Shown here piece by piece: positions 1-18,500 of a DNA stretch of 64,000 nucleotides; position 1 is the first letter of the stretch; each line of letters opens with the position of its first letter. The DNA lies in IMG/VR virus record IMGVR_UViG_3300042402_002564, positions 124,001 through 188,000 of that record. One strand, written 5' to 3'. The notes below the pieces were generated by a model that made no database searches, had not been told where the DNA came from, and saw nothing but the letters and a program-made list of their open reading frames with translations. The position numbers and the translations under genes were made by a program.

Positions 1-15
1 CATCATTATTGAACA

Positions 16-150
16 ATGATTGAAGTTCTTGCCGCTTACGTTGTCGGAATGATGCAGGTTGCACCTAATCTCATTCAGACAGATTACCTCAACGAAGACA
101 AGCAAATCATTTCCGTCACTGAAGTAATCCAAGAGGTTCCACAATCATGA
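16..150 (+). CDS. small hypothetical early protein (44 aa)
   Basis: Hand-read ORF MIEVLAAYVVG...; its stop overlaps the next start (ATGA), typical of coupled early genes. Confidence 0.55.
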   Translation: MIEVLAAYVVGMMQVAPNLIQTDYLNEDKQIISVTEVIQEVPQS

Positions 151-293
151 CACTCACACACCTCAACTATCAAGAGATTGATGCCCTGATGGCAATTCTT
201 GAGAGTAGTGATTGGCATTATCTGACTGAACTTGTGGATGCAGACATTCCGCTTCTGTATGACAAACTCACCGAAATGAGGGATGAACTGTGA
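147..293 (+). CDS. small acidic hypothetical protein (48 aa)
   Basis: Hand-read ORF MTLTHLNYQEIDALMAIL...; overlaps both neighbours (ATGA / GTGA). Confidence 0.6.
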   Translation: MTLTHLNYQEIDALMAILESSDWHYLTELVDADIPLLYDKLTEMRDEL

Positions 294-457
294 CTGAAAC
301 TCTCCGACAGTATCACTTCACTGACGAACAGATTGACTTCCTGATGCGAATTGTGCGGAACAATGCACAATTTGAAGATGGTGAAGACCGTGAGTTCATG
401 GAAGAACTTGCCAATCAAATTGAAGATCAAATCGTCAACCATCCTGACAACGACTGA
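290..457 (+). CDS. small acidic hypothetical protein (55 aa, GTG start)
   Basis: Hand-read ORF (M)TETLRQYHFTDEQIDFLMRIV...; TGATG coupling to the next ORF. Confidence 0.6.
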   Translation: MTETLRQYHFTDEQIDFLMRIVRNNAQFEDGEDREFMEELANQIEDQIVNHPDND

Positions 458-657
458 TGACACCTAACGCACCCTACGGTTGCCAAACCTATAAAGATCT
501 GCTGGTCATGTTACAATCTATGACAGCAGAGCAGTTGGACTGCACTCCTACGGTGTATGATCCTGATGCGGATGAGTATTATCCTATCACCACACTTCTC
601 ACCGCATCTGACACCAACGACGTGTTAGACTCTGATCATCCCTACCTCTCCTTCTGA
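457..657 (+). CDS. hypothetical protein (66 aa)
   Basis: ORF track; TGATG coupling on both sides. Confidence 0.7.
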   Translation: MTPNAPYGCQTYKDLLVMLQSMTAEQLDCTPTVYDPDADEYYPITTLLTASDTNDVLDSDHPYLSF

Positions 658-833
658 TGAACCGTTCTGAACTGCAAGACCAACTCATTCAGCAGATGTT
701 GGATGACATGGATCTCAAGACAATGACCCAACTCTGTTATGATTATCTGGATGAGGGTTATGGTAAGTATTCTGATGAGGAATTGATCACTGAATGTGAA
801 GAATACTACCCCGATTTGCTTGAAAATCAATAA
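657..833 (+). CDS. small acidic hypothetical protein (58 aa)
   Basis: Hand-read ORF MNRSELQDQLIQQMLDDMDLKTM...EEYYPDLLENQ; coupled to the upstream stop. Confidence 0.7.
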   Translation: MNRSELQDQLIQQMLDDMDLKTMTQLCYDYLDEGYGKYSDEELITECEEYYPDLLENQ

Positions 834-939
834 AGTATAAATTATTACAGGATGGGTTGGTATCCTGATTGTCACCGATACCATAAAACTCTACAGAGTC
901 TTTCCCGTCCTACCCAATCCCTGAACTGGCACAGACCCC

Positions 940-968
940 TTGACAGGGTGCCAGGAATCGCTTAATCT
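940..968 (+). promoter_or_regulatory. sigma70-type early promoter
   Basis: TTGACA(940-945)-N17-TAATCT(963-968); -35 flanked by inverted repeat CTGGCAC/GTGCCAG; leader hairpin at 979-998. Confidence 0.75.
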
Positions 969-1038
969 AAGAAAACAAGCGGGGGTGAAGCATCCCGCTC
1001 AAAACACTTCACTCAAACCCTTACAATGTGATTTAATT

Positions 1039-1266
1039 ATGTCTCAGTTCGCTTTTACTTCTTCCGCCATCGAAAGCATCTCTGATGTGAATGATGGTAA
1101 AGTGACTATCACCTTCAACGGTGGTCGTGAGTATACCTACGGTGTGCAAGATGTTGAGATGTTCGTGTCTCAACTGAGCACCGTGATTGCCGAACAGCAG
1201 TCCGTGGGTCGTTTTGTAAATAATGCTATCAAAACGGAACAACTGCTCGCAGTGACCGCCGCCTGA
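1039..1266 (+). CDS. KTSC-domain-like protein
   Basis: SSAIESI...VTITFNGGREYTY...SVGRFVNNAIK matches the KTSC pattern (SS.I..+.Y, F..G..Y.Y, S.G.++N..IK); start moved to ATG 1039 downstream of the promoter. Confidence 0.7.
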   Translation: MSQFAFTSSAIESISDVNDGKVTITFNGGREYTYGVQDVEMFVSQLSTVIAEQQSVGRFVNNAIKTEQLLAVTAA

Positions 1267-1319
1267 TAGTATAATACGGGGGGAGGCAACTCCTCCCATC
1301 ACACTACTCCCAAAGAACA

Positions 1320-1484
1320 ATGACTGATTACTTCGACCCTAACGAACAGTTTTCAATCCTTGATCTTATTGATGATTCACAACCTTATGAAGATTTCTCT
1401 CCTGAGGTTAGACAAATGCTTAACGAAGTTGAGTATTACGATGACTACTCTTATGGGGTAGAAGTCGATAATGATTACGACTAA
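1320..1484 (+). CDS. very acidic small hypothetical protein (54 aa)
   Basis: Hand-read ORF MTDYFDPNEQFSILDLIDD...; follows a hairpin plus C/A-rich leader. Confidence 0.55.
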   Translation: MTDYFDPNEQFSILDLIDDSQPYEDFSPEVRQMLNEVEYYDDYSYGVEVDNDYD

Positions 1485-1543
1485 TCTCGACTAGTTAATC
1501 ATCATAATCTCGTCGAGATCACGTCATTAAATCTCGACGAGAT
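1484..1543. repeat. three copies of a 13-bp palindrome ATCTCGWCGAGAT
   Basis: ATCTCGACTAGTT 1484-1496, ATCTCGTCGAGAT 1507-1519, ATCTCGACGAGAT 1531-1543; spacing 23 and 24 bp; intergenic. Confidence 0.85.
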
Positions 1544-1578
1544 ACGCACACAAATCACTTGAAATTCTTCTCTTTAAC

Positions 1579-1713
1579 ATGGAAAATCGTTCGCTCCTGC
1601 TTTCGCTTCTTCGTAAAGGTCAAACTGGTGAAGAAATTCTCCAGATTCTGGAAACTATCATTGGCAGCGATGATGATAGTGATGGTCCTACCCTAAACCC
1701 CATCGATTTCTGA
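1579..1713 (+). CDS. small hypothetical protein (44 aa)
   Basis: Hand-read ORF MENRSLLLSLLRKGQTGEEILQILETII... Confidence 0.6.
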   Translation: MENRSLLLSLLRKGQTGEEILQILETIIGSDDDSDGPTLNPIDF

Positions 1714-1717
1714 TACA

Positions 1718-1906
1718 ATGGAAACTGCATTTGTGACACCCGTATCTAAGAAAGCAAAAAACCGTTTTGCTAATCTTATGGGTGGACTTGATGAGTGTAT
1801 TGTAGAACAACACAAAGGAGACAAAGTGTTCCTCACAAGTGCAAACGGTAAAAACCATTTCTGGGTTAACATTAACAAAGATCCAGACTGGATTGTAGAG
1901 TTCTAA
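1718..1906 (+). CDS. hypothetical protein (62 aa)
   Basis: ORF track; co-oriented with neighbours; followed by a terminator. Confidence 0.75.
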   Translation: METAFVTPVSKKAKNRFANLMGGLDECIVEQHKGDKVFLTSANGKNHFWVNINKDPDWIVEF

Positions 1907-1917
1907 GATTATACCAT

Positions 1918-1943
1918 CCCCCGCCAAGTGCGGGGGTTTTTTT
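1918..1943 (+). terminator. intrinsic terminator
   Basis: CCCCCGC-CAAGT-GCGGGGG followed by T7. Confidence 0.85.
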
Positions 1944-2068
1944 ATACTTTATAGTATGCTTCCCACCCCTCCCGCCCTCTAGCGTAGGGGCGATGCCCCC
2001 CTGAAGTCAACCCCTGAGCCATAAGCATTTCTGATGCAACCCATAAGCGAGACTGATAGGAAAACCCG

Positions 2069-2096
2069 TTGCAGGGTGCCGCCGATGCTGTAGGAT
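2069..2096 (+). promoter_or_regulatory. putative early promoter
   Basis: TTGCAG-N16-TAGGAT; shares CTGTAGGAT with the modules at 2774 and 3503. Confidence 0.5.
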
Positions 2097-2119
2097 TCTG
2101 GCAACGCCAACCCACCCCC

Positions 2120-2734
2120 ATGGCACACACCGACTCCATCATCGCCACCTATTTCCAGAGCAACACTCTGGATCGCCAGACTGGTGCCCAATGGTATAAC
2201 AACGCTTATGGCGTTTGTGTTACTTTGGGTGAAAAGTATGGTGTCCATTCTGACATCGTTGCAGGTGTTATCGCTGCACTTTCTCCTAACAACAAATGGG
2301 AGAGAAATGTAGAGGATGCTGAGGCAATGATCAAAGCATGGGCATACGAAATCTCCTATGATTCGGTTGCAGTTTGTTCCTACTCTGCCAACAAAGACAA
2401 GGCACAAACTATTCTCGATTTGCAACTTAATCGTGAGCAGATTGTTAAAGTTTTGCGTGGCAACAAAACTATTGCTTTCTTCCTTTGTATTGCTAACAAT
2501 GGTGATAGCGATTCTCCCTGCATTGATGGTCACGCTTACAACATTTGGAACGGAACTGTAACTAACCTGAAAGAGGTTCCTTCTATGTCAGACAAGACTT
2601 TCCGCATGATTCAAGATGCCTACCGTGACGCCGCTAAGTTAATCTCTGAGGTGACGGGTTTGCATTATTCAGCGGCACAAGTGCAAGCGATCACCTGGGT
2701 TACGTATCGCAGGATACACAAAAACCTAGTGTGA
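2120..2734 (+). CDS. DUF7178-like phage protein, possible HhH-glycosylase-like fold
   Basis: Motifs G..WY, AGVIAALSP...W..N, K...F..CI, CIDGHA, QVQAITW; ATG 2120 preferred over the TTG inside the promoter. Confidence 0.7.
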   Translation: MAHTDSIIATYFQSNTLDRQTGAQWYNNAYGVCVTLGEKYGVHSDIVAGVIAALSPNNKWERNVEDAEAMIKAWAYEISYDSVAVCSYSANKDKAQTILDLQLNREQIVKVLRGNKTIAFFLCIANNGDSDSPCIDGHAYNIWNGTVTNLKEVPSMSDKTFRMIQDAYRDAAKLISEVTGLHYSAAQVQAITWVTYRRIHKNLV

Positions 2735-2773
2735 CGGATTGTTACAGGGGCATCGCTGGCGATGCCCCCCATG

Positions 2774-2810
2774 CTGTAGGATACTCTCAAGCGGGGCAAA
2801 CGGACCCCGC
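2774..2810 (+). repeat. 37-bp promoter(-10)/leader stem-loop repeat, copy 1
   Basis: CTGTAGGATACTCTCAAGCGGGGCAAACGGACCCCGC; second copy at 3503-3539 with two compensatory changes. Confidence 0.9.
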
Positions 2811-2827
2811 ACAATCGGAAACCCGAA

Positions 2828-2998
2828 ATGTTCACTTCCTGGTCTGCTGCTCCTAAAGGCACTGGCATGGATCACCTGGAATTTTTCACCAGTGAAGAAC
2901 ACGCCGTAGATGTTGCCTACGATTGGAGTATTGAACTCGGTGGCAAACCCATTGTAATCTACTGTAACGAACAGGAATGGATGGAAATCACCGCCTGA
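2828..2998 (+). CDS. small hypothetical protein (56 aa)
   Basis: Hand-read ORF MFTSWSAAPKG...AVDVAYDWSIELGGKPIVIY; directly downstream of repeat copy 1. Confidence 0.7.
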   Translation: MFTSWSAAPKGTGMDHLEFFTSEEHAVDVAYDWSIELGGKPIVIYCNEQEWMEITA

Positions 2999-3049
2999 TT
3001 TGAAACACTTAGGGGGAGAAATCCCCCTCCCATTCTTCACTCTGAAACA

Positions 3050-3220
3050 ATGAAATTCGGTGCAATTGGTGTAACGATTCGCTACCAAACTCCCTACAAT
3101 TCTTGTGAATGGAGAGAGCAAACGTTTGCTACAATTGATGAGGCAAACCGCATGGTAGATTTCTATCGTTCCTGTGGTTCTCCCGCTGAGGTTGTTACTT
3201 TCCGTGAGGCACAAAAATGA
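3050..3220 (+). CDS. small hypothetical protein (56 aa)
   Basis: Hand-read ORF MKFGAIGVTIRYQTPYNSCEWREQTF...MVDFYRSCGSPAE; follows a GAAA hairpin. Confidence 0.7.
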   Translation: MKFGAIGVTIRYQTPYNSCEWREQTFATIDEANRMVDFYRSCGSPAEVVTFREAQK

Positions 3221-3327
3221 AAACATTTGCCCTCATTTTTGCGGTTATGTTTTTAATGTCTCCAGCAGTTAGAAACACTACCGCGAACACTTTACACACC
3301 GCTGCCACCATCATTTCAGCAGAATGA
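3217..3327 (+). CDS. small hydrophobic peptide (36 aa)
   Basis: MKTFALIFAVMFLMSPAVRN...; ATGA-coupled on both sides. Confidence 0.55.
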   Translation: MKTFALIFAVMFLMSPAVRNTTANTLHTAATIISAE

Positions 3328-3491
3328 CACACTATCCCTCCCGCCTTCGTTTCAAACTACCTGCCGAAAGAATCGCTGAGCTGGTAGAAAAGAATTGCAC
3401 CGTCCTAAGTGATAGTGAATGGATGCAATTTTTTGAAGAAATCAACATTATTTCGGATTGTAACGAAACGCCCGAACTGGTCACCCCCTGA
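3324..3491 (+). CDS. small hypothetical protein (55 aa)
   Basis: Hand-read ORF MTHYPSRLRFKLPAERIAELVE...; coupled start. Confidence 0.5.
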   Translation: MTHYPSRLRFKLPAERIAELVEKNCTVLSDSEWMQFFEEINIISDCNETPELVTP

Positions 3492-3502
3492 CCCCCCTGA
3501 CC

Positions 3503-3539
3503 CTGTAGGATACTCTCAAGCGAGGCAAACGGACCTCGC
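3503..3539 (+). repeat. 37-bp promoter(-10)/leader stem-loop repeat, copy 2
   Basis: CTGTAGGATACTCTCAAGCGAGGCAAACGGACCTCGC. Confidence 0.9.
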
Positions 3540-3557
3540 CCAACCCACACCAGACCG

Positions 3558-3818
3558 ATGCTCGCATCCATCATCCGCACCGCCATCCGCACCCGCCTGA
3601 TCAACGATGGCCCCCAGACCTGCTCCGACCTTGTGCGGGCAATGGGTTTGGATCCTCGCCGTCACAAGGGCACCATCCACGCCCTTATGGTCGATCTGGA
3701 AAAGGCAGGCACCCTGTCCGCCACCCGTTCCGATAATGGCAAGCGGGATCTGTGGTTTGTGAACTTTGAGCAAATCCGCAAGCGGGACCGCATCATCGCC
3801 GCCCTCTCTGGAGTGTGA
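3558..3818 (+). CDS. winged helix-turn-helix DNA-binding protein
   Basis: GPQTCSDLVRAMGL...TIHALMVDLEKAGTL...GKRDLW fits the wHTH pattern (helix-turn-helix, L..LE..G.+, wing). Confidence 0.7.
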   Translation: MLASIIRTAIRTRLINDGPQTCSDLVRAMGLDPRRHKGTIHALMVDLEKAGTLSATRSDNGKRDLWFVNFEQIRKRDRIIAALSGV

Positions 3819-3890
3819 ACGATTGTTAACGGGGGCACGATAGGGTGCCCCCACCCTGTAGAATTTAAAAGTCAACACGGGACACACCCC

Positions 3891-4130
3891 ATGACCGCCT
3901 ACGCTTTCACCGACCGCCAGCAGATTGACGAAAATCCTAAAGTCGATTTCGTCGATACTGTTACCGTCAACCTGAAAGTTTCGCCCCGCGAACTTAAGTT
4001 AATGTGTGATGCGTTGATTGAATCTGACCGCTATATGTGTCAGGAAGGCAAACTACAATCGGCAGATCTCCGCCGATGGGATGCAATCCTCGATTATATT
4101 AAGGATCGGGCATTCAACGACGCTTACTGA
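3891..4130 (+). CDS. hypothetical protein (79 aa)
   Basis: ORF track; preceded by an inverted repeat plus CTGTAGAAT -10-like element. Confidence 0.7.
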   Translation: MTAYAFTDRQQIDENPKVDFVDTVTVNLKVSPRELKLMCDALIESDRYMCQEGKLQSADLRRWDAILDYIKDRAFNDAY

Positions 4131-4180
4131 TACAATCGGGGGGAGAAATCCCCCCTTCTCAAACCACCTCACCTAGAACC

Positions 4181-4507
4181 ATGTTCCCCACCGTTCTTCT
4201 CAACAATCCGATGATTGAAAAGTATAACGAACTGCGTCAGGAAGTTCTTTCTAACGACACTGTGCAGCAGGTTCTTTATACTCTCGCCACCGTGCTAGGT
4301 GTTATCGTTGGTGTCACCCTTTGGTGTTACAAACGCATTGCACAATGGTATAACGAAGGTGGCAAAGATTCTTTCTACTTTGGTATCAACACCAGGGCAG
4401 GAAAGGATGATGAACAGTTCGGCATTGGTATATTCAAACTCTACGTGGGTTTGTATAACAATGTCCTACACATTGGGTTCACAGATCACAATGGGTGCCT
4501 GCCCTAA
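4181..4507 (+). CDS. hypothetical membrane protein
   Basis: ORF track; hydrophobic segment VLYTLATVLGVIVGVTLWCY. Confidence 0.6.
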   Translation: MFPTVLLNNPMIEKYNELRQEVLSNDTVQQVLYTLATVLGVIVGVTLWCYKRIAQWYNEGGKDSFYFGINTRAGKDDEQFGIGIFKLYVGLYNNVLHIGFTDHNGCLP

Positions 4508-4549
4508 GTGACACTTATGGGGTGCTGAGTTCTTTATACTTAGCACCCC
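4505..4549. repeat. adjacent palindrome and 12-bp inverted repeat
   Basis: TAAGTG-A-CACTTA (4505-4517); GGGGTGCTGAGT-N7-ACTTAGCACCCC (4519-4549). Confidence 0.8.
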
Positions 4550-4928
4550 TACATTCGTGCGTAAGTGTAAATGTGACAGTCTGTGACAGACAGTTGACGG
4601 TATAACGGTATCGTGATAACGGCGGGCCGTGCCCCCTACCCCCCCCTTAGCTAAAATTGATGACTCCCCTAACCTACAGAGGTGACAAAACGAGTGAGTG
4701 ATTTCATGTTCATAAGAAAAAATTTTACAGAAAAATTTCGCCTCATAAGGTCGATAAAAACCCTCACAAGGGTCTCCGAGAATCCTCACATAAGTATCCG
4801 TATGCAACTAAAGTATGTTATAATGTGTCTCCGAGAGTCTCTATGGATTCTCATATCACACGCCCTTAAAAATTTTTCGAGGGGTCTCAAAGGGGTGATA
4901 TATAGTGATGTAATGAGAAGGTGGTGAG

Positions 4929-5093
4929 ATGGACGACAAAATCTATCACATTTATAACAAAGAGAATCAGTGTGTATCTCCATGTTTATCTGAGGAAGAA
5001 TTCAGTGATACATGGAAAGAACTCACAGAAGATTCTTATGAATATGAAGAACTCGAAGCTTCTTATTCAAAGCAAGAGGAAGCGTCTTATTGA
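4929..5093 (+). CDS. small acidic hypothetical protein (54 aa)
   Basis: Hand-read ORF MDDKIYHIYNKENQCVSPCLSEEEF...EEASY, more protein-like than the overlapping track ORF 4921-5115. Confidence 0.65.
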   Translation: MDDKIYHIYNKENQCVSPCLSEEEFSDTWKELTEDSYEYEELEASYSKQEEASY

Positions 5094-5141: not shown

Positions 5142-5909
5142 ATGGCAAAAGGATTCACAGTAAAGGCCACTGCCCCTACAAAACCAAAGGAGGAGTGGGA
5201 CTATGAAGCAATTAAAGAACGAATGAGGGGGAAGAGCATTGTTTTTTGCCTCCCAGGTCGTGGATGTTCTTATACATTCCTAAAAGCATTTGTACAACTT
5301 TGTTTTGATCTTGTACAAAACGGAATGGCAATTCAAATTTCTCAAGATTATTCTTCGATGGTAAACTTTGCACGTTGCAAAGTTCTTGGTGCAAACGTTC
5401 TCAGAGGTCCGAAGCAAGTTCCCTGGGATGGTAAACTACAATATGATTATCAACTCTGGATTGATAATGACATTGTGTTTAACTCAGAAAAGTTCTGGCA
5501 ACTGTGTGACCTCGCAGTTCCCGCAGAAGGAGATGAAAAAGAAATCGTTGCTGGATGGTATGCAACCGAAGATGGTCACACAACCTCAGTTGCTCACTGG
5601 TTAGAAGAAGATGATTTCCGTCGTAACGGTGGAGTCATGAATCATGAAACCGTTGAATCGATTCAGAAGCGTCGTAAACCATTTACAGTTGACTACACTG
5701 GATTTGGTTGGGTTATGATTCGTAAAGGTGTATTTGAGCGTCTTGAATATCCTTGGTTCGCTCCTAAGATGCAAGTCTTTGAATCTGGGGCAGTACAAGA
5801 TATGTGTGGAGAGGATGTGTCGTTCTGTCTCGATGCAAAAGAGGCAGGCATTGAAACATGGTGTGACCCACGAATTCGTGTTGGACACGAGAAGACTCGC
5901 GTTATCTGA
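5142..5909 (+). CDS. GT-A fold glycosyltransferase-like protein
   Basis: ARC..L, YDYQLWIDNDI (DxD), TGFGWVMIRKGVFE, GEDVSFC, VGHEK motifs. Confidence 0.8.
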   Translation: MAKGFTVKATAPTKPKEEWDYEAIKERMRGKSIVFCLPGRGCSYTFLKAFVQLCFDLVQNGMAIQISQDYSSMVNFARCKVLGANVLRGPKQVPWDGKLQYDYQLWIDNDIVFNSEKFWQLCDLAVPAEGDEKEIVAGWYATEDGHTTSVAHWLEEDDFRRNGGVMNHETVESIQKRRKPFTVDYTGFGWVMIRKGVFERLEYPWFAPKMQVFESGAVQDMCGEDVSFCLDAKEAGIETWCDPRIRVGHEKTRVI

Positions 5910-9541: not shown

Positions 9542-12500
9542 ATGTTAAATTCCCGTGTAAAAATCAGAAATCTTTTAGAAGGACAACTACCTGAGTTTCT
9601 AAGAGAATCATATCCAGAATTTCAACAGTTATTAACAGAATACTACAAATCTTCAGAGTCTCAGGGGGCACCTTTAGACTTACTTAACAATATTGATCAA
9701 TATGTAAAGATTGATAATCTTGCAGAAATTACATATTATTCGGAACTAAGTGCTAATATTACAGAAAATGATGATGTAATATTAGTAGATAGTACAGATG
9801 GATTTCCAAATAATTATGGATTATTGCAAATAAATGATGAGATAATATCATATGAGTCTAAAACTAATACTTCTTTTGTAAATTGCTCTAGAGGATTTAG
9901 TGGTATTACCTCATATAGAGACGTTGACAAAGATACTTTAATTTTTTCTACTAGCAATTCAGATTCACATTTTTCTGGTTCAACAGTATATAACTTATCA
10001 AATTTCTTTTTACGCGAATTATTTAAAAAATTTAAATCTCAATATGTTCCAGGATTTGACAATATTGATTTCTTCCCAGATGTAAATGAAAAGCTGTTCA
10101 TTTCTAAAGTAAAAGATTTCTATTCGTCAAAAGGTGCCATAACCTCTTTTGAAATATTATTTAAAGCACTCTATGGTCAAATAGTTAAAGTAGTTAAACC
10201 AAAAGATTTTATTATTCAACCATCAGATGCGGACTATAGAATTACTAGAGATCTCGTTGTAGAGCAATATCTTGGAAATCCAGAAAACTTATTGAATCTT
10301 ACTCTGTTTCAAGATCAGACAGAATCAATAACTAAAGCATCTGGAACTATAACTAAGATAGAAAAAATATATAGAAATTCGAAAGAATATTATCAGCTTA
10401 GTTTAGATTACAACCCAGATATCGAAGAATTTGAATTTACAATCCACCCAAAGACTGCGATAGTATCGGATGTAACACAAAATCAAACTTATCTTGATGT
10501 TGATTCAACATTGGGATTCCCAACTTCTGGTGTCTTGTCAGTAAAAGTTGATGGATTAGAATATTTAATATCTTACTCGGATAAATCTTCAACCCAATTT
10601 TTAGGTTGTGCTGATGTTCCATTTATCCCTAGAGGAACTAGAACAGAAACTTTAGACTATGCATATGCTATTGATAGATTTGGAAATGAAGTTAGAGTTA
10701 AAGTCACTGGAGTAATTTCTTCTTTAGATTATAATCCAGAAGAAACTTATTATTATAGAGAAAATGATGAGATTCAATTAGTTTCCTTAGGTAGATTGGG
10801 TAATAAACCAAAACATAATGAATGGATATTTAATATTACTCCAACATATGATGTAGTTAGTATCACACAATTAACCAATAAAATAAACGGTGCTGCTAGA
10901 TTTAGATTAGTAACAAAAGATGAAAATATTTTTACCGTTGGTGATCCAGCAATCATTAAATCCAATACTGGATTAATTTTAGATGCTTTTGTAATTTCAG
11001 TTAGCGATAAAAATACAATTGATATTAATTTAACTGTAGATGTTGATAAATCTTTAAAATATACAATTACCAAAGATATATCAAAAGTAAACTGCATAAA
11101 TTATCCAGAATTAAATGTATTGTCATCTGATGTTCAAAATGTTTATATTGATAAAAATGATGTTTATGTAACTTCAGCATCTTTACCAAACTATTATAAT
11201 GTTCCATTATCCTTAAAAGACTATTCAATAGTTTTTAGTGGAGAATTTAATGGTGAAGATTTAGTTTTAGGAGATCATCCATTTTATACTGGAGATTCCA
11301 TTTTTTATAAGTCCCAAAGTCCTACAAATAAATTAAACATTGAAGATGGAATATATTATGTGAAAAAAGTTAATGAAAGTACTATTAAATTAGCATCTAG
11401 TAAATCTAATTTATATAATGATATCTTCATTTCTCTATTTGGTACTATAAGTGATAATAAAATTCAGTTATCCAGATTCTATAATTTAAGTCCAAAATCT
11501 CAAAAATTAGTAAGAAAAATATCAGATCCTGTTGATGAAGGGATTTCATATGAAACTGAATCTGGACAAACTGGTATTTTAAAAAATGGTGTTGAAATTT
11601 TAAATTATAAATCTAATGATTTTGTTTATTATGGTGAAATAGAAGATTTAAAAGTAACTTCTTCTGGAGATTCAAACTATGATGTTATAAGTCCACCTAT
11701 TTTACACATAAGTGATGCTGTTGGATCTGGTGCTACTGGTGTATGTAATGTTGTAGGTTCACTTAAAAGGATTAATATCATTGATGGTGGATATGGATAT
11801 ATAAGTGAACCAAAAATAACAATAATAGGCGGAAATGGTTTTGGTGCTTCTGCAAAGGCAAACCTAATTTCAATTACAAATTCGGTAAAATTTAATGCTG
11901 GAGATCAATACGATCAAGTAAACTTATCAAATAGCACAATAGGATTTACTACAGATCATAGATTTTTTGATACTGAACAGGTAGTATATAAGTGTGGAAT
12001 TCAAACCTCAATTGGTGGATTAACAAATGATTCAATTTACTACGTTGGAGTAATTGATAGATTCACTATCAATTTATACTCATCTTTAAAAGATTCTATT
12101 AGTGGTATAAACACTATATCATTTACTTCTTATGGCGACGGATTACACACTATAGATTCATTTGAAAAAAGAAAAAAAATATCATCTATAGATGTTATTT
12201 CTTCGGGTGAGAATTATCAAAATAAAACACTATTTTTCAATCCATCTGATGTAAATATTTACTCAGATACCATAACAATAAAAAATCACAGATATAAAGA
12301 TAAAGAAATAGTAAATTACAACTCTACCCAAAGTTTAATTTCTGGATTATCATCTACTACAGATTATTATGTAAAAGTTATAGATAATGATCATATAAAA
12401 TTATCCTTAGTTGGAATTGGAACTTCTATTTCGGAAGATTTCTACTTTAATAAAAATAGATTCATATCTTTAGGTACTAAAGGTACTGGAATCCACAAGT

Positions 12501-15500
12501 TGATATATAAACCAATAACAATTAGTATAGAATCGCCTGTTGGCATAACGACATTCTCTGGGCAGGATTTTGATGCCAAAGTGCAGGCTATTTTTAGAGG
12601 AAATATTGATTCAATATCATTAAGTAATAAAGGTAAGCATTATGGTGATGAAGAAATTATAAACTATAATAGACAACCATTGGTTACATTATTAAATGGT
12701 GACTCTGCATTAATTACTCCTATTGTTTCCAATACTGGACAAGTCATTGATGCAATTATTAATAATAGAGGTTTCTATTATAATAGTCCACCAGAATTAA
12801 TAATAGACGGTGATGGTGTTGGTTGCATATTAACTCCAGTTATTAAAGATGGAAAAATCGTAGAGGTAAAAATAATTAATACTGGATTTGGATATAATAA
12901 AAATAACACTTTTGTTAGAGTTGTATCTCCTGGTTCTGGTGCAAAGTTTGAAGCTCAAATAAAAAACTGGAGAATTAATCTTGTCGAAAGATTAATAGAT
13001 ACCAATCAAATAAGATTTGATGATGGTGTTTTGTCGTTAGGAAAAAATGAAAGATATGGTTTACAATATTGCCACCCATATATTCCAAGAGAGTTAAGAA
13101 GAAAAAGCTTATCCACATCTTTAGGTGAAGATGGAACAGTAATTTATAGAAATGATATATTAAATGATGATTTAACTTTAAAATATCATTCTCCAATTAT
13201 TGGATGGGCTTACGATGGCAATCCAATTTACGGACCTTATGGTTACGGTGATAGAGAAGGTGGTTTAGTAAAAAGAATGACTTCTGGTTATTCACTTAGA
13301 CCAAAACCAGACAGACCATCATCATATCCAATTGGATTATTTGTTGAAGATTATGAATTCTCGGGTGAGGGTGATTTAGACATTTATAATGGAAGATATT
13401 GTAAGACACCAGAATTTCCAAACGGGGTTTATGCATATTTTTCAACTATTAATGCTCAAAAAGATTCTTCTGGAATCTTTAATGGATTTTTAAGACCAGT
13501 TTTCCCATATTTTATTGGAAATTATTATAAATCAAATCCTATAAGATTTAATTTTGATTTATTATCAAATCAAGACTTTATTGATATAAATCAAACAAAA
13601 TGGTTGAGAAATACTACACCATATTCAGTATTTTTAAACAACAGTTATTATGATGGATTTGTACAACCAGATAAATTCATACAAAACTATCCAATAATCA
13701 CATCCACGGTTCCTGGATTTGTTGATGAATTAAAGGTTGTTAATTTTGGCGATAATTACTCAATTAATGATAATATTTTCTTTAACAATGAAGGTTCTAG
13801 TGGTTCTGGAGCATATGCATCTATTAAAGAAATATCTGGAAGATCTGTACAAAATATTGTATATAATTCTTCAGTAATTGATAATGTTGAAATTGTTCCA
13901 TATAATAATAGTGGCACATTTATTGGATTTGCTACAGAACCGCATAATTTATCAGTATCAGATTTGATTAGAATCCAAAATCTTTCAAATTTAAATACAC
14001 AGTTTGATGGAATTTATAAAGTTGGAATAACAACAAATCAATTAACACTAACCCAAAACATTCCAAATTCTTCAATAACAGGTATTGTTACTTATATTAA
14101 TGTTATTGGAACGTTGACTATACCAGATCTTAGTGTAAATGATGTATTGGGAATTGGAACAGAAAAGGTTAAGGTTTTAGAGGTTGATACACCTAGCTCC
14201 AGAATAAAAGTAAGAAGAGAATATGATTCCACACTTGGAGTGGCACATTCTCAAGGAATTACTATCCAAGAATATCCAAGAAAGTTTTTTGTTAATATTG
14301 GTCTTACTGATATATCAAATTATAAATTAAATAAAGAACTCTATTTTTATCCAGCAGAAGCTATTTCTATACCAAGTGAGAATGTACTACCATACTCTAA
14401 TCCAGTAGATTTCTCCAATTGGTCTTCATATGTTGTTGGATCTGGATCTACCGTTACTGTAACTTATTACAATCATCCAGCTCCAAATAATACAATATCT
14501 GCAGCAAAAGTTCAAGTAGGTGTAGTAACATCAACAGAAATTTCTGGAATACTAAATGGACCTGTAACATTATCATCTGATGATTACACAATATCAGTAT
14601 TTTTGAAAGGTCAATTTGGTGGGGAAATTGTTTATTTAATAGTTGAAGATGGATCTAATTTTATTGCACAGCAATTAGTATTAACTAGTTCTTGGAAAAG
14701 ATATTCAGTATCTGGCACCGCAAATGCTGGACCTCACGACTTTTTTGTTGGTGGTTGGGGTCCACAAGGATATACAATACCAGAGTCTACATTTTACATT
14801 TGGGGGGCACAAATAGAATCTGGGAATGTATTAACTCCGTATATAAAAACTGAATCTTCTATTGTATTAAGAGCAGATAATGAAGTTGGAACTACTTATT
14901 TCTCAAATCCTGGATTTGGTATTAAAGAAGTAATTATTCCACAAAATTCAATTTATTTACCAGGTCATAATCTCAATACTGGAGATACTTTAATCTATAA
15001 AAATAATGGAAATAATTCAATCCAAGTTTCATTTGCTACAACGACATTTCCATTAGCAAATAATAGTGAACTATTTGCAGTTAGATATTCTGATACTTTT
15101 ATTGGGATATCTACTATAAAGGTAGGATTAGGTACAACTGGTTCTTATGTTGGAATTGGAACTACTGCATTAGGAAATATTCTAACATTTTCTGGATATG
15201 GCACTGGATTGGACCATAGTTTTGTTACAAACTATGATAATATTATATCAGGTGACATTTATAGAAAGGATGCAGTAGTAACTACAGATAGAGAACATGG
15301 ATTAAGAGTATCTGATATAATTGATATTAATGTTATTTCTGGAATTCAAACTACAGTTTATATTAGTTACGATGATTTAAATAGGAGATTGTTGGTAAAT
15401 CCAAGATCATTTACCGCACTAAATGTAGATACTAATGAAAATACTATATCTATACTTAATCATGGATTTGAATTGGGTTTCAAAGTAATACATAATTCAC

Positions 15501-18500
15501 AAACTCCAACTGGAGGTCTGAATAATGCTCAAATATATTACATAATTCCAATTAGTGAGAATTTAATAAAATTATCAAATAACTATTACTCCTCAATATT
15601 ATCATCAACTGAAGTTGAGTTTGTAGATCTTACTTCTGCATCATTTGGTACGTTGACACCTATTAATCCAGAAATAAAGGCGATAGCAAATTCCACTGTT
15701 ATATTTGATTTGTCAGATCAATCCTTATCCATTAATGGCGTACCCTCATTCGATTTTAACCTTTATACGGATAGTCAATTTAAAAATAAATTCTTCAACA
15801 CACAAAGTAACTTAAAGCAATTTAATGTATTCAAATCAGGAACTATCGGCATTGATGGTGGACGCTTAACATTGATAATAGATGAAAATGTACCAAAAAA
15901 TTTATATTATACATTAACTCCAATTAATTATGACGGTGCTTCTGCTGCAAAACTAGAATATTTTGAAGATGACTTTAATGTAAAAAATAATAATAAATTT
16001 AGCATTGTTCAGAGTGAGTTCAGTAAAAGAACAACTATTACTGGTGTAACAACAAATACATTTAGATATTCTTTAGTAAATACTCCAGAAAAATCTGGAT
16101 ATACAGTATCAGAAGGTATTACTACTTACTTCACAAATTCTCCTTCTGCTATAGGCCCAGTATATTCAACTAATGTCAGTTCCAAAGGAAGAGGTTATAG
16201 AAAATTACCTACAGTTGTAAATATTAGTAGTGGACTTGGAACTAATGCTATTTTCTTACCAGCAAGTAAAACTTTAGGAAAAGCATCTGAAGTTGAAATT
16301 ACTGATATTGGTTTTGACTATCCAGTAGATTATACTTTAAGACCATATGCTAAGTTTCCAAATGTATTTAAAATTGAACCTCTTTCCAAATTTAAAGAGA
16401 TAAAAATAATTTCTCCTGGAGTAAATTATTTTGTTCCACCGCAATTATTAGTTTTAGACGGATTTACTGGAAGAGTTAATGATGAAGTAGATTTAAGATA
16501 TCAAATTGGAGACATTGAAGTAACTATTGTAAGAAATACAACTGGTTTGTATAACGTTAAGCCTGTCATAATTCCAATTAATAATCCAAATGGTACTAGA
16601 ATTAGTAATATTTCTTATAATAGTACTACTAAAGAAGTTACCGTTGGATTAGGTATTAGTTATACTTCAGAAGACCAATTCCCATTTATAATTGGTGAAA
16701 AAGTAATTGTAGAAAATACAAATATTGATTTGGTAGAAGGTGGTAGAGGATATAACTCTGCAAATTATGGTTATGTATTATTTGAAATAATAGATGCCAA
16801 TTCAAATATTGGTGTAGAAGAAGATCCCTTTATTGTTTATAGTTTGCAAAGTTTATTGGGACCAAACCAAAGTCCTGGAATATATGATTCTTTTGAATCA
16901 TTTGGTACAGTTACTCCAGAGAGATATTTCCCAAGTTTTGACATAAAATTAGAAAAAGATTCTTTCAGGGCAGGAGAAATAGTTACAACAGATTCTGGTT
17001 CTATTGGTGTAGTTCAAAATTATGATCAAGCGAATGAATACTTAAAAATTAGAACAAAGTATCAATTTAATGTTAATGATTTAATTGTTGGTGCATCTTC
17101 TGGAAATAAAGGTGTAATTTCTTCGGTAGAAGGTGCTGAAGGAATCTTTGATGTCCGTTCTAATAGCATTACCAGAAAAGGATGGCAAAAACAAACTGGA
17201 TATTTAAGTGATGGGTTACAAAGAATTCATGATAATGACTATTATCAGTATTTTTCATATTCATTGAAGAGTCCAGTAAGTTATGAAATTTGGAATCCTG
17301 TAGTAAGTAATTTAAACCATACTGCTGGATTTAAAAAATTTGGAGAATTATCTATAGAGTCATTCAATGCAGATGAAGTTGGAATAAGCACATCTCAAGA
17401 TTTCGGAGCACTGATTGCAATTTCTGACCTAGTTGAGGTTGTTGATTTAAATTGCGTAAAAGATTTTGATGTTGCTAGAGAAAAAAGTATATTAATAGAT
17501 GAAACATTAGTTTCAAATGAAATTATATTCAGACTACCATTCCTACAAAGATATCAAGAATTTATTGGCAATAGAGTATTAAAAATTGATGATATTAGTA
17601 ACCAATTTGATAATAATACTAGAAGTTTTGACTTATATAGTAACAACTATCCAATATTCAAAGTACAATTTAATGCAAGTGATCCAAATATTGTTGACTT
17701 GGCAGATGCGAGTGTTAACTTAATTAATCATTATTTCGTATCAGGTGAAGAAGTTGAATATATTCCACAAGATAATGATTTTAATAATGCGATAGAAATA
17801 GTGCCCACATTTATAAGTGGAATAGGGGTTACTACAAAATTACCACCATCAATTTACGTAATTAAGGTAGATAACCAAAGAATTCGTTTTGCTTCTTCAC
17901 CAGAAAATGCACTTTTATTTAACCCAGTATCTATCAATTTAACTTCAGTTGGAATTGGAAGTACTCACATTTTTAAATCAAAAATTCAAAATACAAAGGC
18001 ACTGATTACAATCAATGGAACTATACAAACTCCAATAGTTGGAACAGCAATAACCTCTGCTCTTAGCAACTCTGTAGGAATAGGTTCTACTATTATTGGT
18101 GTTGTTGGTATTTCTTCATTCTTTGGTGGTGATTTAATTCAAATCAATGAAGAGATTATGAAGATTACTGCTGTTAGTTCAGCATCTACTACATTTACTG
18201 TATTAAGATCATGGATGGGAACTGTAGAATCTTCTCACAATACTAATGACCAAATAATTAAACTTTCTGGAACTTACAATATTATTGATAATACAATCAA
18301 TTTTATTGAACCAATGTGGGGTAATCTACCAATTGGATTTGGAACTACAGCAACATCTTCTGGTGAAATAGATTATGCTGGATTGACAACTAGTAGTAGA
18401 TTTAGTGGAAGAGTATTCATAAGATCGGCACTTAACCAAGCATTTACTACAAGTTTTGTAAGAGCGTATGAAACTAACTATATCTTTGATGATATATCAG

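What the first reader, a model, noticed from the sequence alone, without database searches (positions are those of the whole stretch)
920..4180. Early region built from repeated promoter/stem-loop cassettes (PeSL-like shuffling units)
Seen: nearly every 1-4 gene block is preceded by a related unit. These include CTGTAGRAT -10 boxes (hexamers at 2091, 2777, 3506, 3859), an upstream GATTGT(T/A)A motif (2737, 3456, 3821), GC stems, and C/A-rich leaders without a Shine-Dalgarno. Established: promoter-early-stem-loop (PeSL) cassettes mediate modular gene shuffling in some T4-type phages. Inference: these units are both regulatory elements and recombination handles for exchanging small host-takeover genes.
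Basis: partly seen in the sequence, partly recalled or inferred. Interest (0 to 1): 0.6.

Follow-up and report, generated by a model that had tools for sequence, protein, structure and literature searches.

The report
Shuffling promoter-hairpin cassettes in cyanophage island
A freshwater T4-like cyanophage keeps about 30 tiny genes in a GC-rich block where almost every gene is preceded by a reusable hairpin-promoter-leader cassette, and related phages differ by gene gains, losses and swaps that mostly join at these cassettes, which extends the known PeSL shuffling system to cyanophages.

Summary
Window 920-4180 holds nine intergenic units for twelve small genes. Four carry CTGTAGRAT (7 matches in the window against 1.2 expected), and 27-50 nt direct repeats link the units.

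The stretch is the right half of an 8.4 kb island at 44-50% GC in a 246.5 kb, roughly 32% GC T4-like cyanomyovirus from lake metagenomes. The nearest isolate is S-SRM01.

Units are built from modules:
- a TG(G/T)NACA box;
- a G/C hairpin over the -35 position;
- a -10 hexamer, (T/C)A...T in 32 units from six phages;
- a short C/A-rich leader without Shine-Dalgarno, often a 5' hairpin.

Two relatives about 80% identical differ from this genome by at least nine gene-content events in 8 kb. Most junctions lie at a -10 box, a hairpin or a leader. Chimeric cassettes occur. One relative's two cassette cores are identical (44/44). Lake and wetland contigs show deletions joining two cassettes.

This matches the PeSL cassettes of RB49/phi1, T4/PST and KVP40/nt-1, adapted to a cyanobacterial host.

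Not shown: promoter or terminator activity, mini-circles, or that cassettes cause the exchanges. Some gene swaps occur at TGATGA gene junctions without any cassette.

The parts
1..4900 (+). Right-hand part of a GC-rich hyperplastic early-gene island. The whole island is genome 120,500-128,900, which is window -3500 to +4900, so its left 3.5 kb lies before the window.
   Evidence: GC is 0.42-0.51 here against about 0.30 in the rest. GC3 is 0.46 against 0.25. A syntenic raised-GC island exists in S-SRM01 and B23.
16..833 (+). String of five overlapping small ORFs (16-150, 147-293, 290/344-457, 457-657, 657-833). ORFs 147-833 are absent from relatives B and C at this place.
   Evidence: Contig joints 138->684 and 287->653. 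ORF 457-657 is 95.6% identical to L046, exactly from ATG to stop.
921..1038 (+). Unit K: box TGGCACA 927-933, -35 TTGACA 940-945, 17-nt spacer, -10 TAATCT 963-968, leader hairpin 978-999, ATG at 1039.
   Evidence: Read; hairpin -11.7 kcal/mol, z -3.3. Homology to relatives resumes at 963 or 975. Alternative upstream sequence in contigs ends at 975.
1039..1266 (+). Small ORF (75 aa), family phrog_4357, with a weak KTSC-like match.
1267..1484 (+). Unit L (TATAAT 1270-1275, hairpin 1278-1297) plus a 54-aa ORF at 1320-1484. This module is present only in this genome.
   Evidence: Hairpin -16.4 kcal/mol. Absent from L013/L100 and L015/L098. It is bounded by the TGATAG stop and the first palindrome.
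1485..1578 (+). Unit M: three copies of the palindrome ATCTCG(A/T)CGAGAT-like motif (10-mers start at 1485, 1508 and 1532) ahead of ORFs 1579-1713 and 1718-1906.
   Evidence: All 16 genome matches to TCTCGWCKAG lie in the island. The same clusters occur in S-SRM01, B and C.
1918..1936 (+). Canonical intrinsic terminator (7 GC pairs plus a T7 run). It is one of only two of this kind on the + strand of the island.
2069..2119 (+). Unit N: -35-like TTGCAG 2069-2074, -10 TAGGAT 2091-2096 inside CTGTAGGAT, 23-nt C/A-rich leader, ATG at 2120.
   Evidence: The whole 1907-2119 spacer is conserved in B and C.
2120..2734 (+). DUF7178 protein (204 aa). Its phage homologues are in T7-like cyanopodoviruses, roseophages and actinophages.
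   Evidence: Pfam E 5e-41; tblastn.
2735..2827 (+). Unit O: box TGTTACA 2740-2746, hairpin 2747-2768, -10 TAGGAT 2777-2782, leader hairpin 2791-2810, ATG at 2828.
   Evidence: Hairpins -17.8 and -12.8 kcal/mol. A 50-nt repeat links it to unit Q. Homology to B breaks at 2784, right after the -10. Joints at 2734->3851 and 2786->3557.
2828..2998 (+). 56-aa ORF. B and C carry strongly diverged alleles, and B's has a different leader (GTCAACACGGGACAC type).
2999..3049 (+). Unit P: hairpin-only unit (3012-3027, GGGGGA/UCCCCC) plus a pyrimidine-rich tail and a C/A leader, ahead of ORFs 3050-3220, 3217-3327 and 3324-3491.
   Evidence: -12.4 kcal/mol, not distinct from shuffles. A 27-nt repeat links it to unit S. 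Homology to B resumes at 3012.
3459..3557 (+). Unit Q: box TGTAACG 3459-3465 (inside the end of ORF 3324-3491), -10 TAGGAT 3506-3511, leader hairpin 3520-3539, ATG at 3558.
   Evidence: Relative to unit O the stem changes on both sides (GCGGGG/CCCCGC against GCGAGG/CCTCGC) and still pairs.
3558..3818 (+). 86-aa ORF of unknown function, GC3 0.75, conserved in B and C.
   Evidence: No Pfam, PHROG or PDB match.
3819..3890 (+). Unit R: box TGTTAAC 3824-3830, hairpin 3831-3852, -10 TAGAAT 3859-3864, leader GTCAACACGGGACAC, ATG at 3891.
   Evidence: Hairpin -19.4 kcal/mol. A 33-nt repeat links it to two units left of the window. The unit and its gene are absent in C and replaced in B.
3891..4130 (+). 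79-aa ORF found only in this genome. B has an unrelated 46-aa ORF here and C has none.
4131..4180 (+). Unit S: TACAAT 4131-4136, hairpin 4138-4155, C/A leader, ATG at 4181.
   Evidence: -15.7 kcal/mol; repeat shared with unit P.
4181..4549 (+). Last island ORF (108 aa; its N-terminal part differs in B and C), followed by a terminal hairpin at 4519-4549.
   Evidence: The hairpin was read. B and C have a canonical terminator at this place.

Best explanation
Window 920-4180 is part of an 8.4 kb hyperplastic early-gene island of an uncultivated freshwater T4-like cyanomyovirus. About 30 small + strand ORFs are separated by about 20 composite regulatory cassettes of the PeSL type.

Each cassette is assembled from interchangeable modules:
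1. a TG(G/T)NACA box just after the upstream stop codon;
2. a G-tract/C-tract hairpin that covers the -35 position, and in some units carries a TTGACA-like hexamer in its loop;
3. a -10 hexamer of the form (T/C)A...T, seen as CTGTAGGAT, TGGTATGAT, TATACT and TAATCT;
4. a 16-60 nt C/A-rich leader without Shine-Dalgarno, often beginning with a small 5' hairpin;
5. the ATG.

Inferred function: the unmodified host RNA polymerase with its primary sigma factor starts at each cassette early in infection. The hairpin attenuates or ends read-through and protects the 3' end of the upstream mRNA. The leader allows Shine-Dalgarno-independent initiation.

Shown by comparison: the 20-50 nt shared cores lie at the points where gene modules are inserted, deleted and replaced between related phages and within natural populations.

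Inferred mechanism: the phage's homologous recombination machinery uses these cores as short homology, as proposed for PeSLs.
For: - Phage identity: T4-like structural genes. The record is 246.5 kb with terminal repeats. The nearest relatives are S-SRM01 and B3/B23.
- Motif and repeat statistics and stable hairpins.
- -10 signature: anchoring on the leader motif GTTCAC/GTCAAC, the hexamer 6-7 nt upstream (9 nt in L095) has A at position 2 and T at position 6 in all 32 units I judged to be real cassettes, from six phages.
- Full sigma70-type promoters with 17-nt spacers occur in the left half of the island and at unit K.
- Hyperplasticity: gene orders of genomes A, B and C differ by at least 9 events in about 8 kb, while shared genes are 78-86% identical.
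- Junctions: BLAST blocks against B end at 138|963, 1250|1507, 2784|3012 and 3889|4373. Five of the six ends inside 920-4180 fall in units, which make up 25% of that stretch (my count).
- After the same TGGTATGATT box, genomes A, B and C carry three different leader-plus-gene modules.
- After CTGTAGGATAC, A and B carry different leaders and alleles.
- Concerted evolution: C's two cores are 44/44 identical, against 8/44 and 4/44 differences from A's positional counterparts.
- Population data: a contig joint at 2734->3851 with a hybrid O/R hairpin, a joint at 2786->3557 (O/Q), and loose ends at 975, 1024, 2777, 2784 and 2816 that place the cassette core in other contexts.
- The cassette core occurs in nine viral contigs, including a distant phage (L095) where it precedes unrelated genes.
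- Five of the nine contigs break inside the island.
- The published PeSL definition matches.
Against: - There are no transcript 5' or 3' ends. The RNA-library contigs cannot show starts and may be DNA carry-over.
- Units N, O, Q and R have no good -35 hexamer. E. coli-type strong promoter matches are not enriched in the island (5 of 154 on the + strand).
- Most hairpins lack a U-tract, so terminator activity is doubtful. Only two canonical terminators were found.
- Junctions in intergenic DNA are what selection for intact genes would leave under any recombination mechanism.
- Several gene-precise indels and one 95.6%-identical transferred gene are bounded by TGATGA or ATGA start-stop overlaps with no cassette.
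- No 'go-back' (circle) joints were seen, although contigs would hide rare forms.
Confidence: 0.7

Rival explanations
1. The units are ordinary promoters and hairpins whose likeness reflects shared function only. Gene turnover comes from illegitimate or microhomology recombination anywhere, and selection keeps only products with intact genes. Junctions therefore appear at intergenic units without the units being recombination handles.
For: Gene-precise indels occur at cassette-free TGATGA junctions: joints 138->684 and 287->653. ORF 457-657 is shared at 95.6% identity with L046 exactly from ATG to stop. Gene 34 of B and C ends at a tight gene junction.
Against: Chimeric cassettes have junctions right at the conserved -10 core. 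Cassette copies within one genome are identical although positional counterparts differ. Deletion forms join two cassettes of the same class. The same core appears in unrelated contexts.
Confidence: 0.2
2. The CTGTAGRAT units are not promoters but RNA-processing sites. A long transcript from unit N or further upstream would be cut in the single-stranded UGUAGGAUAC segment between an upstream 3'-protecting hairpin and a downstream 5'-protecting hairpin.
For: Units O, Q and R lack a -35 hexamer and sit between two stable hairpins. Only two strong terminators divide the island.
Against: Across 32 units the hexamer varies exactly as a -10 element does, with A2 and T6 invariant. It keeps a 6-7 nt distance (9 nt in L095) to the conserved leader start. 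Related units with the same leaders have full -35/-10 pairs with 17-nt spacers.
Confidence: 0.08
3. The GC-rich block is foreign to the phage: an assembly chimera or an inserted mobile element with its own repeats.
For: GC jumps sharply from about 30% to 45-50% and the GC skew changes sign. DUF7178 is otherwise a podovirus-type gene.
Against: The same island sits between the same flanking genes in the isolate S-SRM01, in B23 and in two metagenomic lineages. The stretch is held nearly whole in runs of many separate lake studies. Several island genes are common cyanomyovirus genes. No integrase or transposase was found.
Confidence: 0.02

Closest known systems
PeSL (promoter-early stem-loop) cassettes of coliphages RB49/phi1 (Arbiol et al. 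2010, PMC2839356)
   Same: Both have a stop codon followed by a polyG/polyC stem-loop placed between or over the promoter boxes, a sigma70-type promoter and a start codon. Both occur in many copies concentrated in a hyperplastic region of small ORFans. In both, insertions, deletions and replacements between close relatives join at the cassettes, and chimeric cassettes occur.
   Different: Here there is no Shine-Dalgarno and no AT-rich upstream tract. Instead the units have a TG(G/T)NACA box, C/A-rich leaders with 5' hairpins, and many promoters with a -10 only. The whole region is GC-rich relative to the genome. Promoter and terminator activity and mini-circles were shown experimentally for RB49/phi1 but not here.
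PeSL/PmSL elements of T4/PST and KVP40/nt-1 (Comeau et al. 2014, PMC4122927)
   Same: These show that each T4-like lineage has its own cassette consensus and that the cassettes lie beside indels. The present units fit that pattern as a further lineage.
   Different: In those phages the stem-loop lies just upstream of the promoter and carries A/T-flanked stems, and a Shine-Dalgarno is present. No middle-promoter (Mot-box) version is expected or seen in this cyanophage.
'ORFanage' region of cyanophage S-PM2 (Puxty et al. 2015, PMC4503421) and the cyanomyovirus hyperplastic region (Millard et al. 2009, cited in PMC3152331)
   Same: Both are blocks of small ORFs of unknown function in T4-like cyanophages that are gained and lost. 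Links to freshwater gene pools were suggested.
   Different: Puxty et al. found only one early promoter and two stem-loops there, and judged PeSL-mediated exchange unlikely. Here the cassette density is about one per 1-3 genes.

Membership tests
PeSL cassettes of T4-like phages | Sigma70-type early promoter (-35, about 17 nt, -10) in the intergenic unit | tested here: inconclusive
   Full TTGACA-17-TAnnnT pairs occur at unit K and in five or more units in the left half of the island. Units N, O, Q and R have only a -10 of the form TAGGAT or TAGAAT. The -10 signature holds in 32 units. Activity was not measured.
PeSL cassettes of T4-like phages | Stable stem-loop (often polyG/polyC) within or next to the promoter, acting as terminator or attenuator | tested here: inconclusive
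   Hairpins of -12 to -22 kcal/mol overlap the -35 position, and stems differ between orthologous units but stay complementary. Most lack a U-tract. Termination was not tested.
PeSL cassettes of T4-like phages | Shine-Dalgarno and start codon at the 3' end of the cassette | tested here: not met
   None of 12 scored island genes has GGAG/GAGG/AGGA upstream, and the leaders are C/A-rich. Only 24% of the other genes in this genome have such a motif, so this is likely a host-specific difference.
PeSL cassettes of T4-like phages | AT-rich tract upstream of the -35 | tested here: not met
   The upstream part is a TG(G/T)NACA box followed by G/C stems.
PeSL cassettes of T4-like phages | Many related copies concentrated in a hyperplastic region of small non-essential ORFs | tested here: met
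   About 20 units lie in 8.4 kb. The repeat families and several motifs are confined to the island. A few further TGGCACA units occur elsewhere in the genome.
PeSL cassettes of T4-like phages | Insertions, deletions and replacements between close relatives join at the cassettes, and chimeric cassettes occur | tested here: met
PeSL cassettes of T4-like phages | Excision of mini-circles by recombination between neighbouring cassettes | not testable with these tools
   Only assembled contigs were available. Cassette-to-cassette deletion joints were seen but no circle joints.

The most novel reading that the evidence does not exclude
The island is a compositionally separate 'early compartment' kept in a low-GC jumbo cyanophage. 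It is GC-rich, C-skewed and free of Shine-Dalgarno motifs. In this reading it is tuned to be read by the unmodified machinery of a high-GC freshwater picocyanobacterium before the phage's 27 tRNAs act. One of these, tRNA-Leu(UAA), is encoded in the island behind its own promoter. The island would also serve as a common exchange hub, where portable promoter-leader cassettes let genes from myoviruses and podoviruses plug in and be expressed at once. The island-restricted 13-bp palindromes would act as operators or an origin that times the block.
Probability: 0.25. Interest if true: 0.7.

Novelty: new member of a known kind. Interest (0 to 1): 0.45.

Why it matters
PeSL-mediated modular shuffling has so far been documented in T4-like phages of enterobacteria, Yersinia and vibrios. 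The one cyanophage examined for it (S-PM2) was judged poor in such elements.

If this reading holds, the same strategy operates in freshwater cyanomyoviruses, rebuilt from cyanobacterial-type signals. The data here also add concerted evolution of the cassettes and natural deletion variants in lakes.

This gives a concrete route by which cyanophages trade small early genes. It also gives a defined set of promoter-leader parts for cyanobacterial hosts that can be tested on the cultured relative S-SRM01.

Tried and rejected
- Megablast of 800-4600 against phage records found nothing. Relatives were found only through the conserved neighbour gene and a cassette pattern.
- Rfam gave only the tRNA.
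- Pfam, PHROGs and PDB gave no function for most small ORFs. My by-eye guess that ORF 3558-3818 is a winged-helix regulator was not supported, so I dropped it.
- GATTGTWA as a stand-alone motif is not enriched. I reinterpreted it as part of a wider box.
- Strong E. coli-type promoter matches are not enriched in the island, and other early regions exist. The island is therefore not 'the' early region.
- Late-promoter words (TATAAATA, CTAAATA) are absent from the island, but the expected count is below one, so this is uninformative.
- I considered a sigma54 reading of TGGCAC...TTGC and rejected it. The spacing is wrong, and cyanobacteria lack sigma54 (from my own knowledge).
- NtcA, CRP and LexA sites do not fit the box or the palindrome (by eye only).
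- No circle-type joints were found in contigs.
- The RNA-library contigs cover parts of the region, and one begins at 975, the predicted start of unit K. DNA contigs also break there, so this is not evidence of a transcription start.

Full report
**What the window is.** The window is bases 124,001-188,000 of a 246,502-bp virus record with direct terminal repeats. Its large ORFs are T4-type baseplate, sheath, portal and major head proteins. The nearest isolates are the freshwater Synechococcus phage S-SRM01 (Kyanoviridae) and phages B3/B23, at about 67% nucleotide identity in the baseplate genes. The stretch occurs nearly whole in lake and freshwater metagenomes of many separate studies. The genome is about 32% GC and carries 27 tRNA genes.

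**The observation.** CTGTAGRAT lies at 2088, 2774, 3503 and 3856. There are 7 matches in the window against 1.2 expected, and no shuffle reaches 7. The three other matches lie inside long ORFs. GATTGTWA is present at 2737, 3456 and 3821 but is not enriched by itself.

Direct-repeat families tie the units together. A 50-nt family joins 2765-2814 and 3494-3543 at 86% identity. Further families of 33, 27 and 27 nt exist. The GC stems are stable, at -10 to -22 kcal/mol. Nine units precede the twelve ORFs of 920-4180. Leaders are C/A-rich, and none of 12 scored island genes has a Shine-Dalgarno motif, against 24% of the other genes.

The finding lies in a GC-rich island at genome 120,500-128,900, which is window -3500 to +4900. 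The island is 44-50% GC against about 30% around it, and its GC skew has the opposite sign. GC3 of its genes is 0.46 against 0.25.

The island holds about 30 small + strand ORFs, nearly all of unknown function. It also holds a tRNA-Leu(UAA) gene behind a TTGACA-17-TATCAT promoter. S-SRM01 and, more weakly, B23 have a raised-GC island of small genes at the same place, upstream of gp25/gp6. The first island gene is conserved in many cyanomyoviruses. There it lies only 1-2.5 kb from the neighbour gene at 5142-5909, against 8.2 kb here. The island is therefore an expanded hyperplastic locus.

**Anatomy of the units.** I read the intergenic sequences of this genome (A), two relatives (B = L100/L013 and C = L098/L015), S-SRM01 (D), L046 (E) and L095 (F). 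The units are built from five modules:
- a TG(G/T)NACA box just after the upstream stop codon, at about -48 to -42 from the predicted start (-59 in unit Q);
- a G-tract/C-tract hairpin over the -35 position, which in several units carries TTGACA, TTGCAA or TTGACT in its loop;
- a -10 hexamer;
- a leader that begins 6-7 nt later with GTTCAC (often a GTTC...GAAC hairpin), with GTCAAC, or with a CAAGCG-stem hairpin;
- the ATG, without a Shine-Dalgarno.

Anchoring on the leader motif, I picked 32 real cassettes by eye from the 52 motif hits. In all 32 the hexamer upstream has A at position 2 and T at position 6. That is the pattern expected of a -10 element.

Hairpin stems differ between positional counterparts but stay complementary. 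The O and Q leader stems differ by a change on both sides that keeps pairing. Hairpin-only units (L, P, S) and clusters of a 13-bp palindrome (unit M) complete the set. Only two canonical terminators divide the island. Similar TGGCACA-hairpin-TATAAT units occur at a few other places in the genome.

**The comparative test.** The conserved neighbour gene and a cassette pattern retrieved two lineages that span the whole island, with 78-86% identity in shared genes.

Gene-family orders (placement of family 17 in C read from the intergenic sequence):
- A: 2|6|7|tRNA|8'|9|10|11|12|13|14|15|16|17|19|20|21|22|23|24|25|26|27|28|29|30
- B: 2|6|34|7|tRNA|35|16|17|9|11|12|13|19|21|22|23|24'|25|26|27|28|36|30
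- C: 2|6|34|7|tRNA|35|38|17|9|12|13|19|21|22|23|24''|25|26|27|28|30

That is at least nine events in 8 kb.

BLAST blocks of A against B end at 138|963, 1250|1507, 2784|3012 and 3889|4373:
- 963 is the first base of the -10 of unit K.
- 1507 lies in the palindromes.
- 2784 is two bases after CTGTAGGAT.
- 3012 is the first base of hairpin P.
- 3889 is the end of unit R.

Five of the six ends inside 920-4180 fall in units, which make up 25% of that stretch. A simple binomial on my count gives about 0.005, with the selection caveat discussed below.

After the same TGGTATGATT box, A, B and C carry three different leader-plus-gene modules. After CTGTAGGATAC, A and B carry different leaders and alleles. 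The module at 1267-1484 (unit L plus its ORF) sits between a stop codon and the palindromes. Between units R and S, A and B have unrelated ORFs and C has none.

C's two cassette cores are identical (44/44). They differ at 8 and 4 positions from A's positional counterparts. This points to conversion between cassettes.

**Population evidence.** I laid contigs of three lake DNA runs and one wetland RNA library on 1-5000.
- A joint at 2734->3851 has a hybrid hairpin between the two sides, so unit O is fused to unit R and five genes are missing.
- A joint at 2786->3557 fuses O to Q.
- The B/C-type form of unit K coexists with the A form, shown by loose ends at 975.
- An alternative leader and gene begins after 1024.
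- The O core at 2777/2784-2816 is flanked on both sides by unrelated sequence.
- Contigs fragment at the units, and five of nine IMG/VR contigs holding the cassette break inside the island.

**Counter-evidence.** Joints at 138->684 and 287->653 remove genes at TGATGA or ATGA start-stop overlaps where there is no cassette. ORF 457-657 is 95.6% identical to a copy in the otherwise divergent L046, exactly from ATG to stop. Cassettes are therefore not needed for gene-precise exchange. Selection for intact genes would place junctions between genes under any mechanism.

E. coli-type strong promoter matches are not enriched in the island. Units N, O, Q and R lack a -35 hexamer. Most hairpins lack a U-tract. 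No circle joints were seen. No transcript ends are available.

**Comparison with what is known.** Arbiol et al. described PeSLs as follows. The upstream stop codon is followed by a sigma70-like promoter and a stem-loop, often polyG/polyC. The stem-loop lies upstream of, between, over or after the promoter boxes. A Shine-Dalgarno and the start codon follow. The elements are concentrated in hyperplastic regions, flank indels and can excise as mini-circles. Comeau et al. extended this to T4/PST and KVP40/nt-1, each with a lineage-specific consensus.

The present units share the architecture, the location and the association with indels. They differ by lacking a Shine-Dalgarno and an AT-rich tract, by the TG(G/T)NACA box, by swappable leader modules and by their GC-rich setting. 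Puxty et al. found few such elements in cyanophage S-PM2. The S-SRM01 paper does not mention the island or promoters. Early transcription of cyanomyoviruses by unmodified host polymerase is the accepted view.

**Verdict.** Regulatory activity and a causal role in recombination remain inferred. I class this as a new member of a known kind, of moderate interest. The GC-rich, Shine-Dalgarno-free 'early compartment', the island-restricted palindromes and an invariant 21-nt element at the island's right edge are the less expected by-products.

Noticed in passing
window 1-4900, continuing to genome 120,500 (L009 6500-14900): An 8.4 kb island at 44-50% GC, with reversed GC skew and GC3 of 0.46, sits in a genome of about 32% GC. 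It lies at the same place in S-SRM01 and, more weakly, in B23. In most cyanomyoviruses the two flanking conserved genes are only 1-2.5 kb apart.
   Followed up: partly
window 1485-1544; L009 6590-6835 and 8347-8392: A 13-bp palindrome, ATCTCG(A/T)CGAGAT, occurs in three clusters at about 24-nt spacing. All 16 genome matches to TCTCGWCKAG lie in the island. The clusters are conserved in S-SRM01, B and C. The largest cluster sits beside an AT-rich tract at the island's left border. They may be an operator array or an origin; nothing was tested.
   Followed up: partly
window 4667-4687: The 21-nt element CCCTAACCTACAGAGGTGACA is invariant or nearly so in 51 distinct cyanomyovirus loci. In most of them it lies about 14 nt downstream of a TATAAAA-like box, upstream of the conserved 54-aa and 255-aa genes. 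There is no Rfam match.
   Followed up: partly
L009 8406-8533 (genome 122,406-122,533): A tRNA-Leu(UAA) gene lies inside the GC-rich island behind its own TTGACA-17-TATCAT promoter, far from the main tRNA cluster at 225-230 kb. B23 has the same tRNA at the same locus.
   Followed up: partly
L009 7125-7300; L010 9085-9260 and 10630-10800; also window 1937-2068: Conserved noncoding elements of about 130-170 nt follow the strong terminators and run into the next promoter's TGGCACA box. They contain a long-range inverted repeat (GATGTAT...ATACATC). There is no Rfam match, and structure was not analysed.
   Followed up: partly
window 457-657 and 657-833: Two small ORFs (one in Pfam DUF7326) are 95.6% and 87% identical to copies in L046 and about 94% identical to a copy in L048. 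Those phages' islands are otherwise different and reach 59% GC. In relative B the pair sits at another position in the island.
   Followed up: yes
genome 109,893 and 110,190 (outside the window): Two nearly identical TGG(C/T)ACA-hairpin-TATAAT cassettes lie 300 bp apart and flank one small ORF. This arrangement could excise as a mini-circle.
   Followed up: no
L009 6492-6520 and 6552-6580, minus strand: Two very good sigma70-type promoter matches (12/12 and 11/12) point leftwards, out of the island's left border into the AT-rich tract.
   Followed up: no
window 9542-21169 and 22788-30296: Two giant ORFs of 3875 and 2502 aa. The first corresponds to the gene annotated 'baseplate wedge initiator' (gp7-like) in S-SRM01.
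   Followed up: no
L010 11513-11950 (S-SRM01), minus strand: An AT-rich HNH endonuclease gene sits inside the S-SRM01 island next to a palindrome cluster. B23 also has a homing endonuclease near the island's right border. This is a second possible driver of local plasticity, and it is absent from this genome's island.
   Followed up: no
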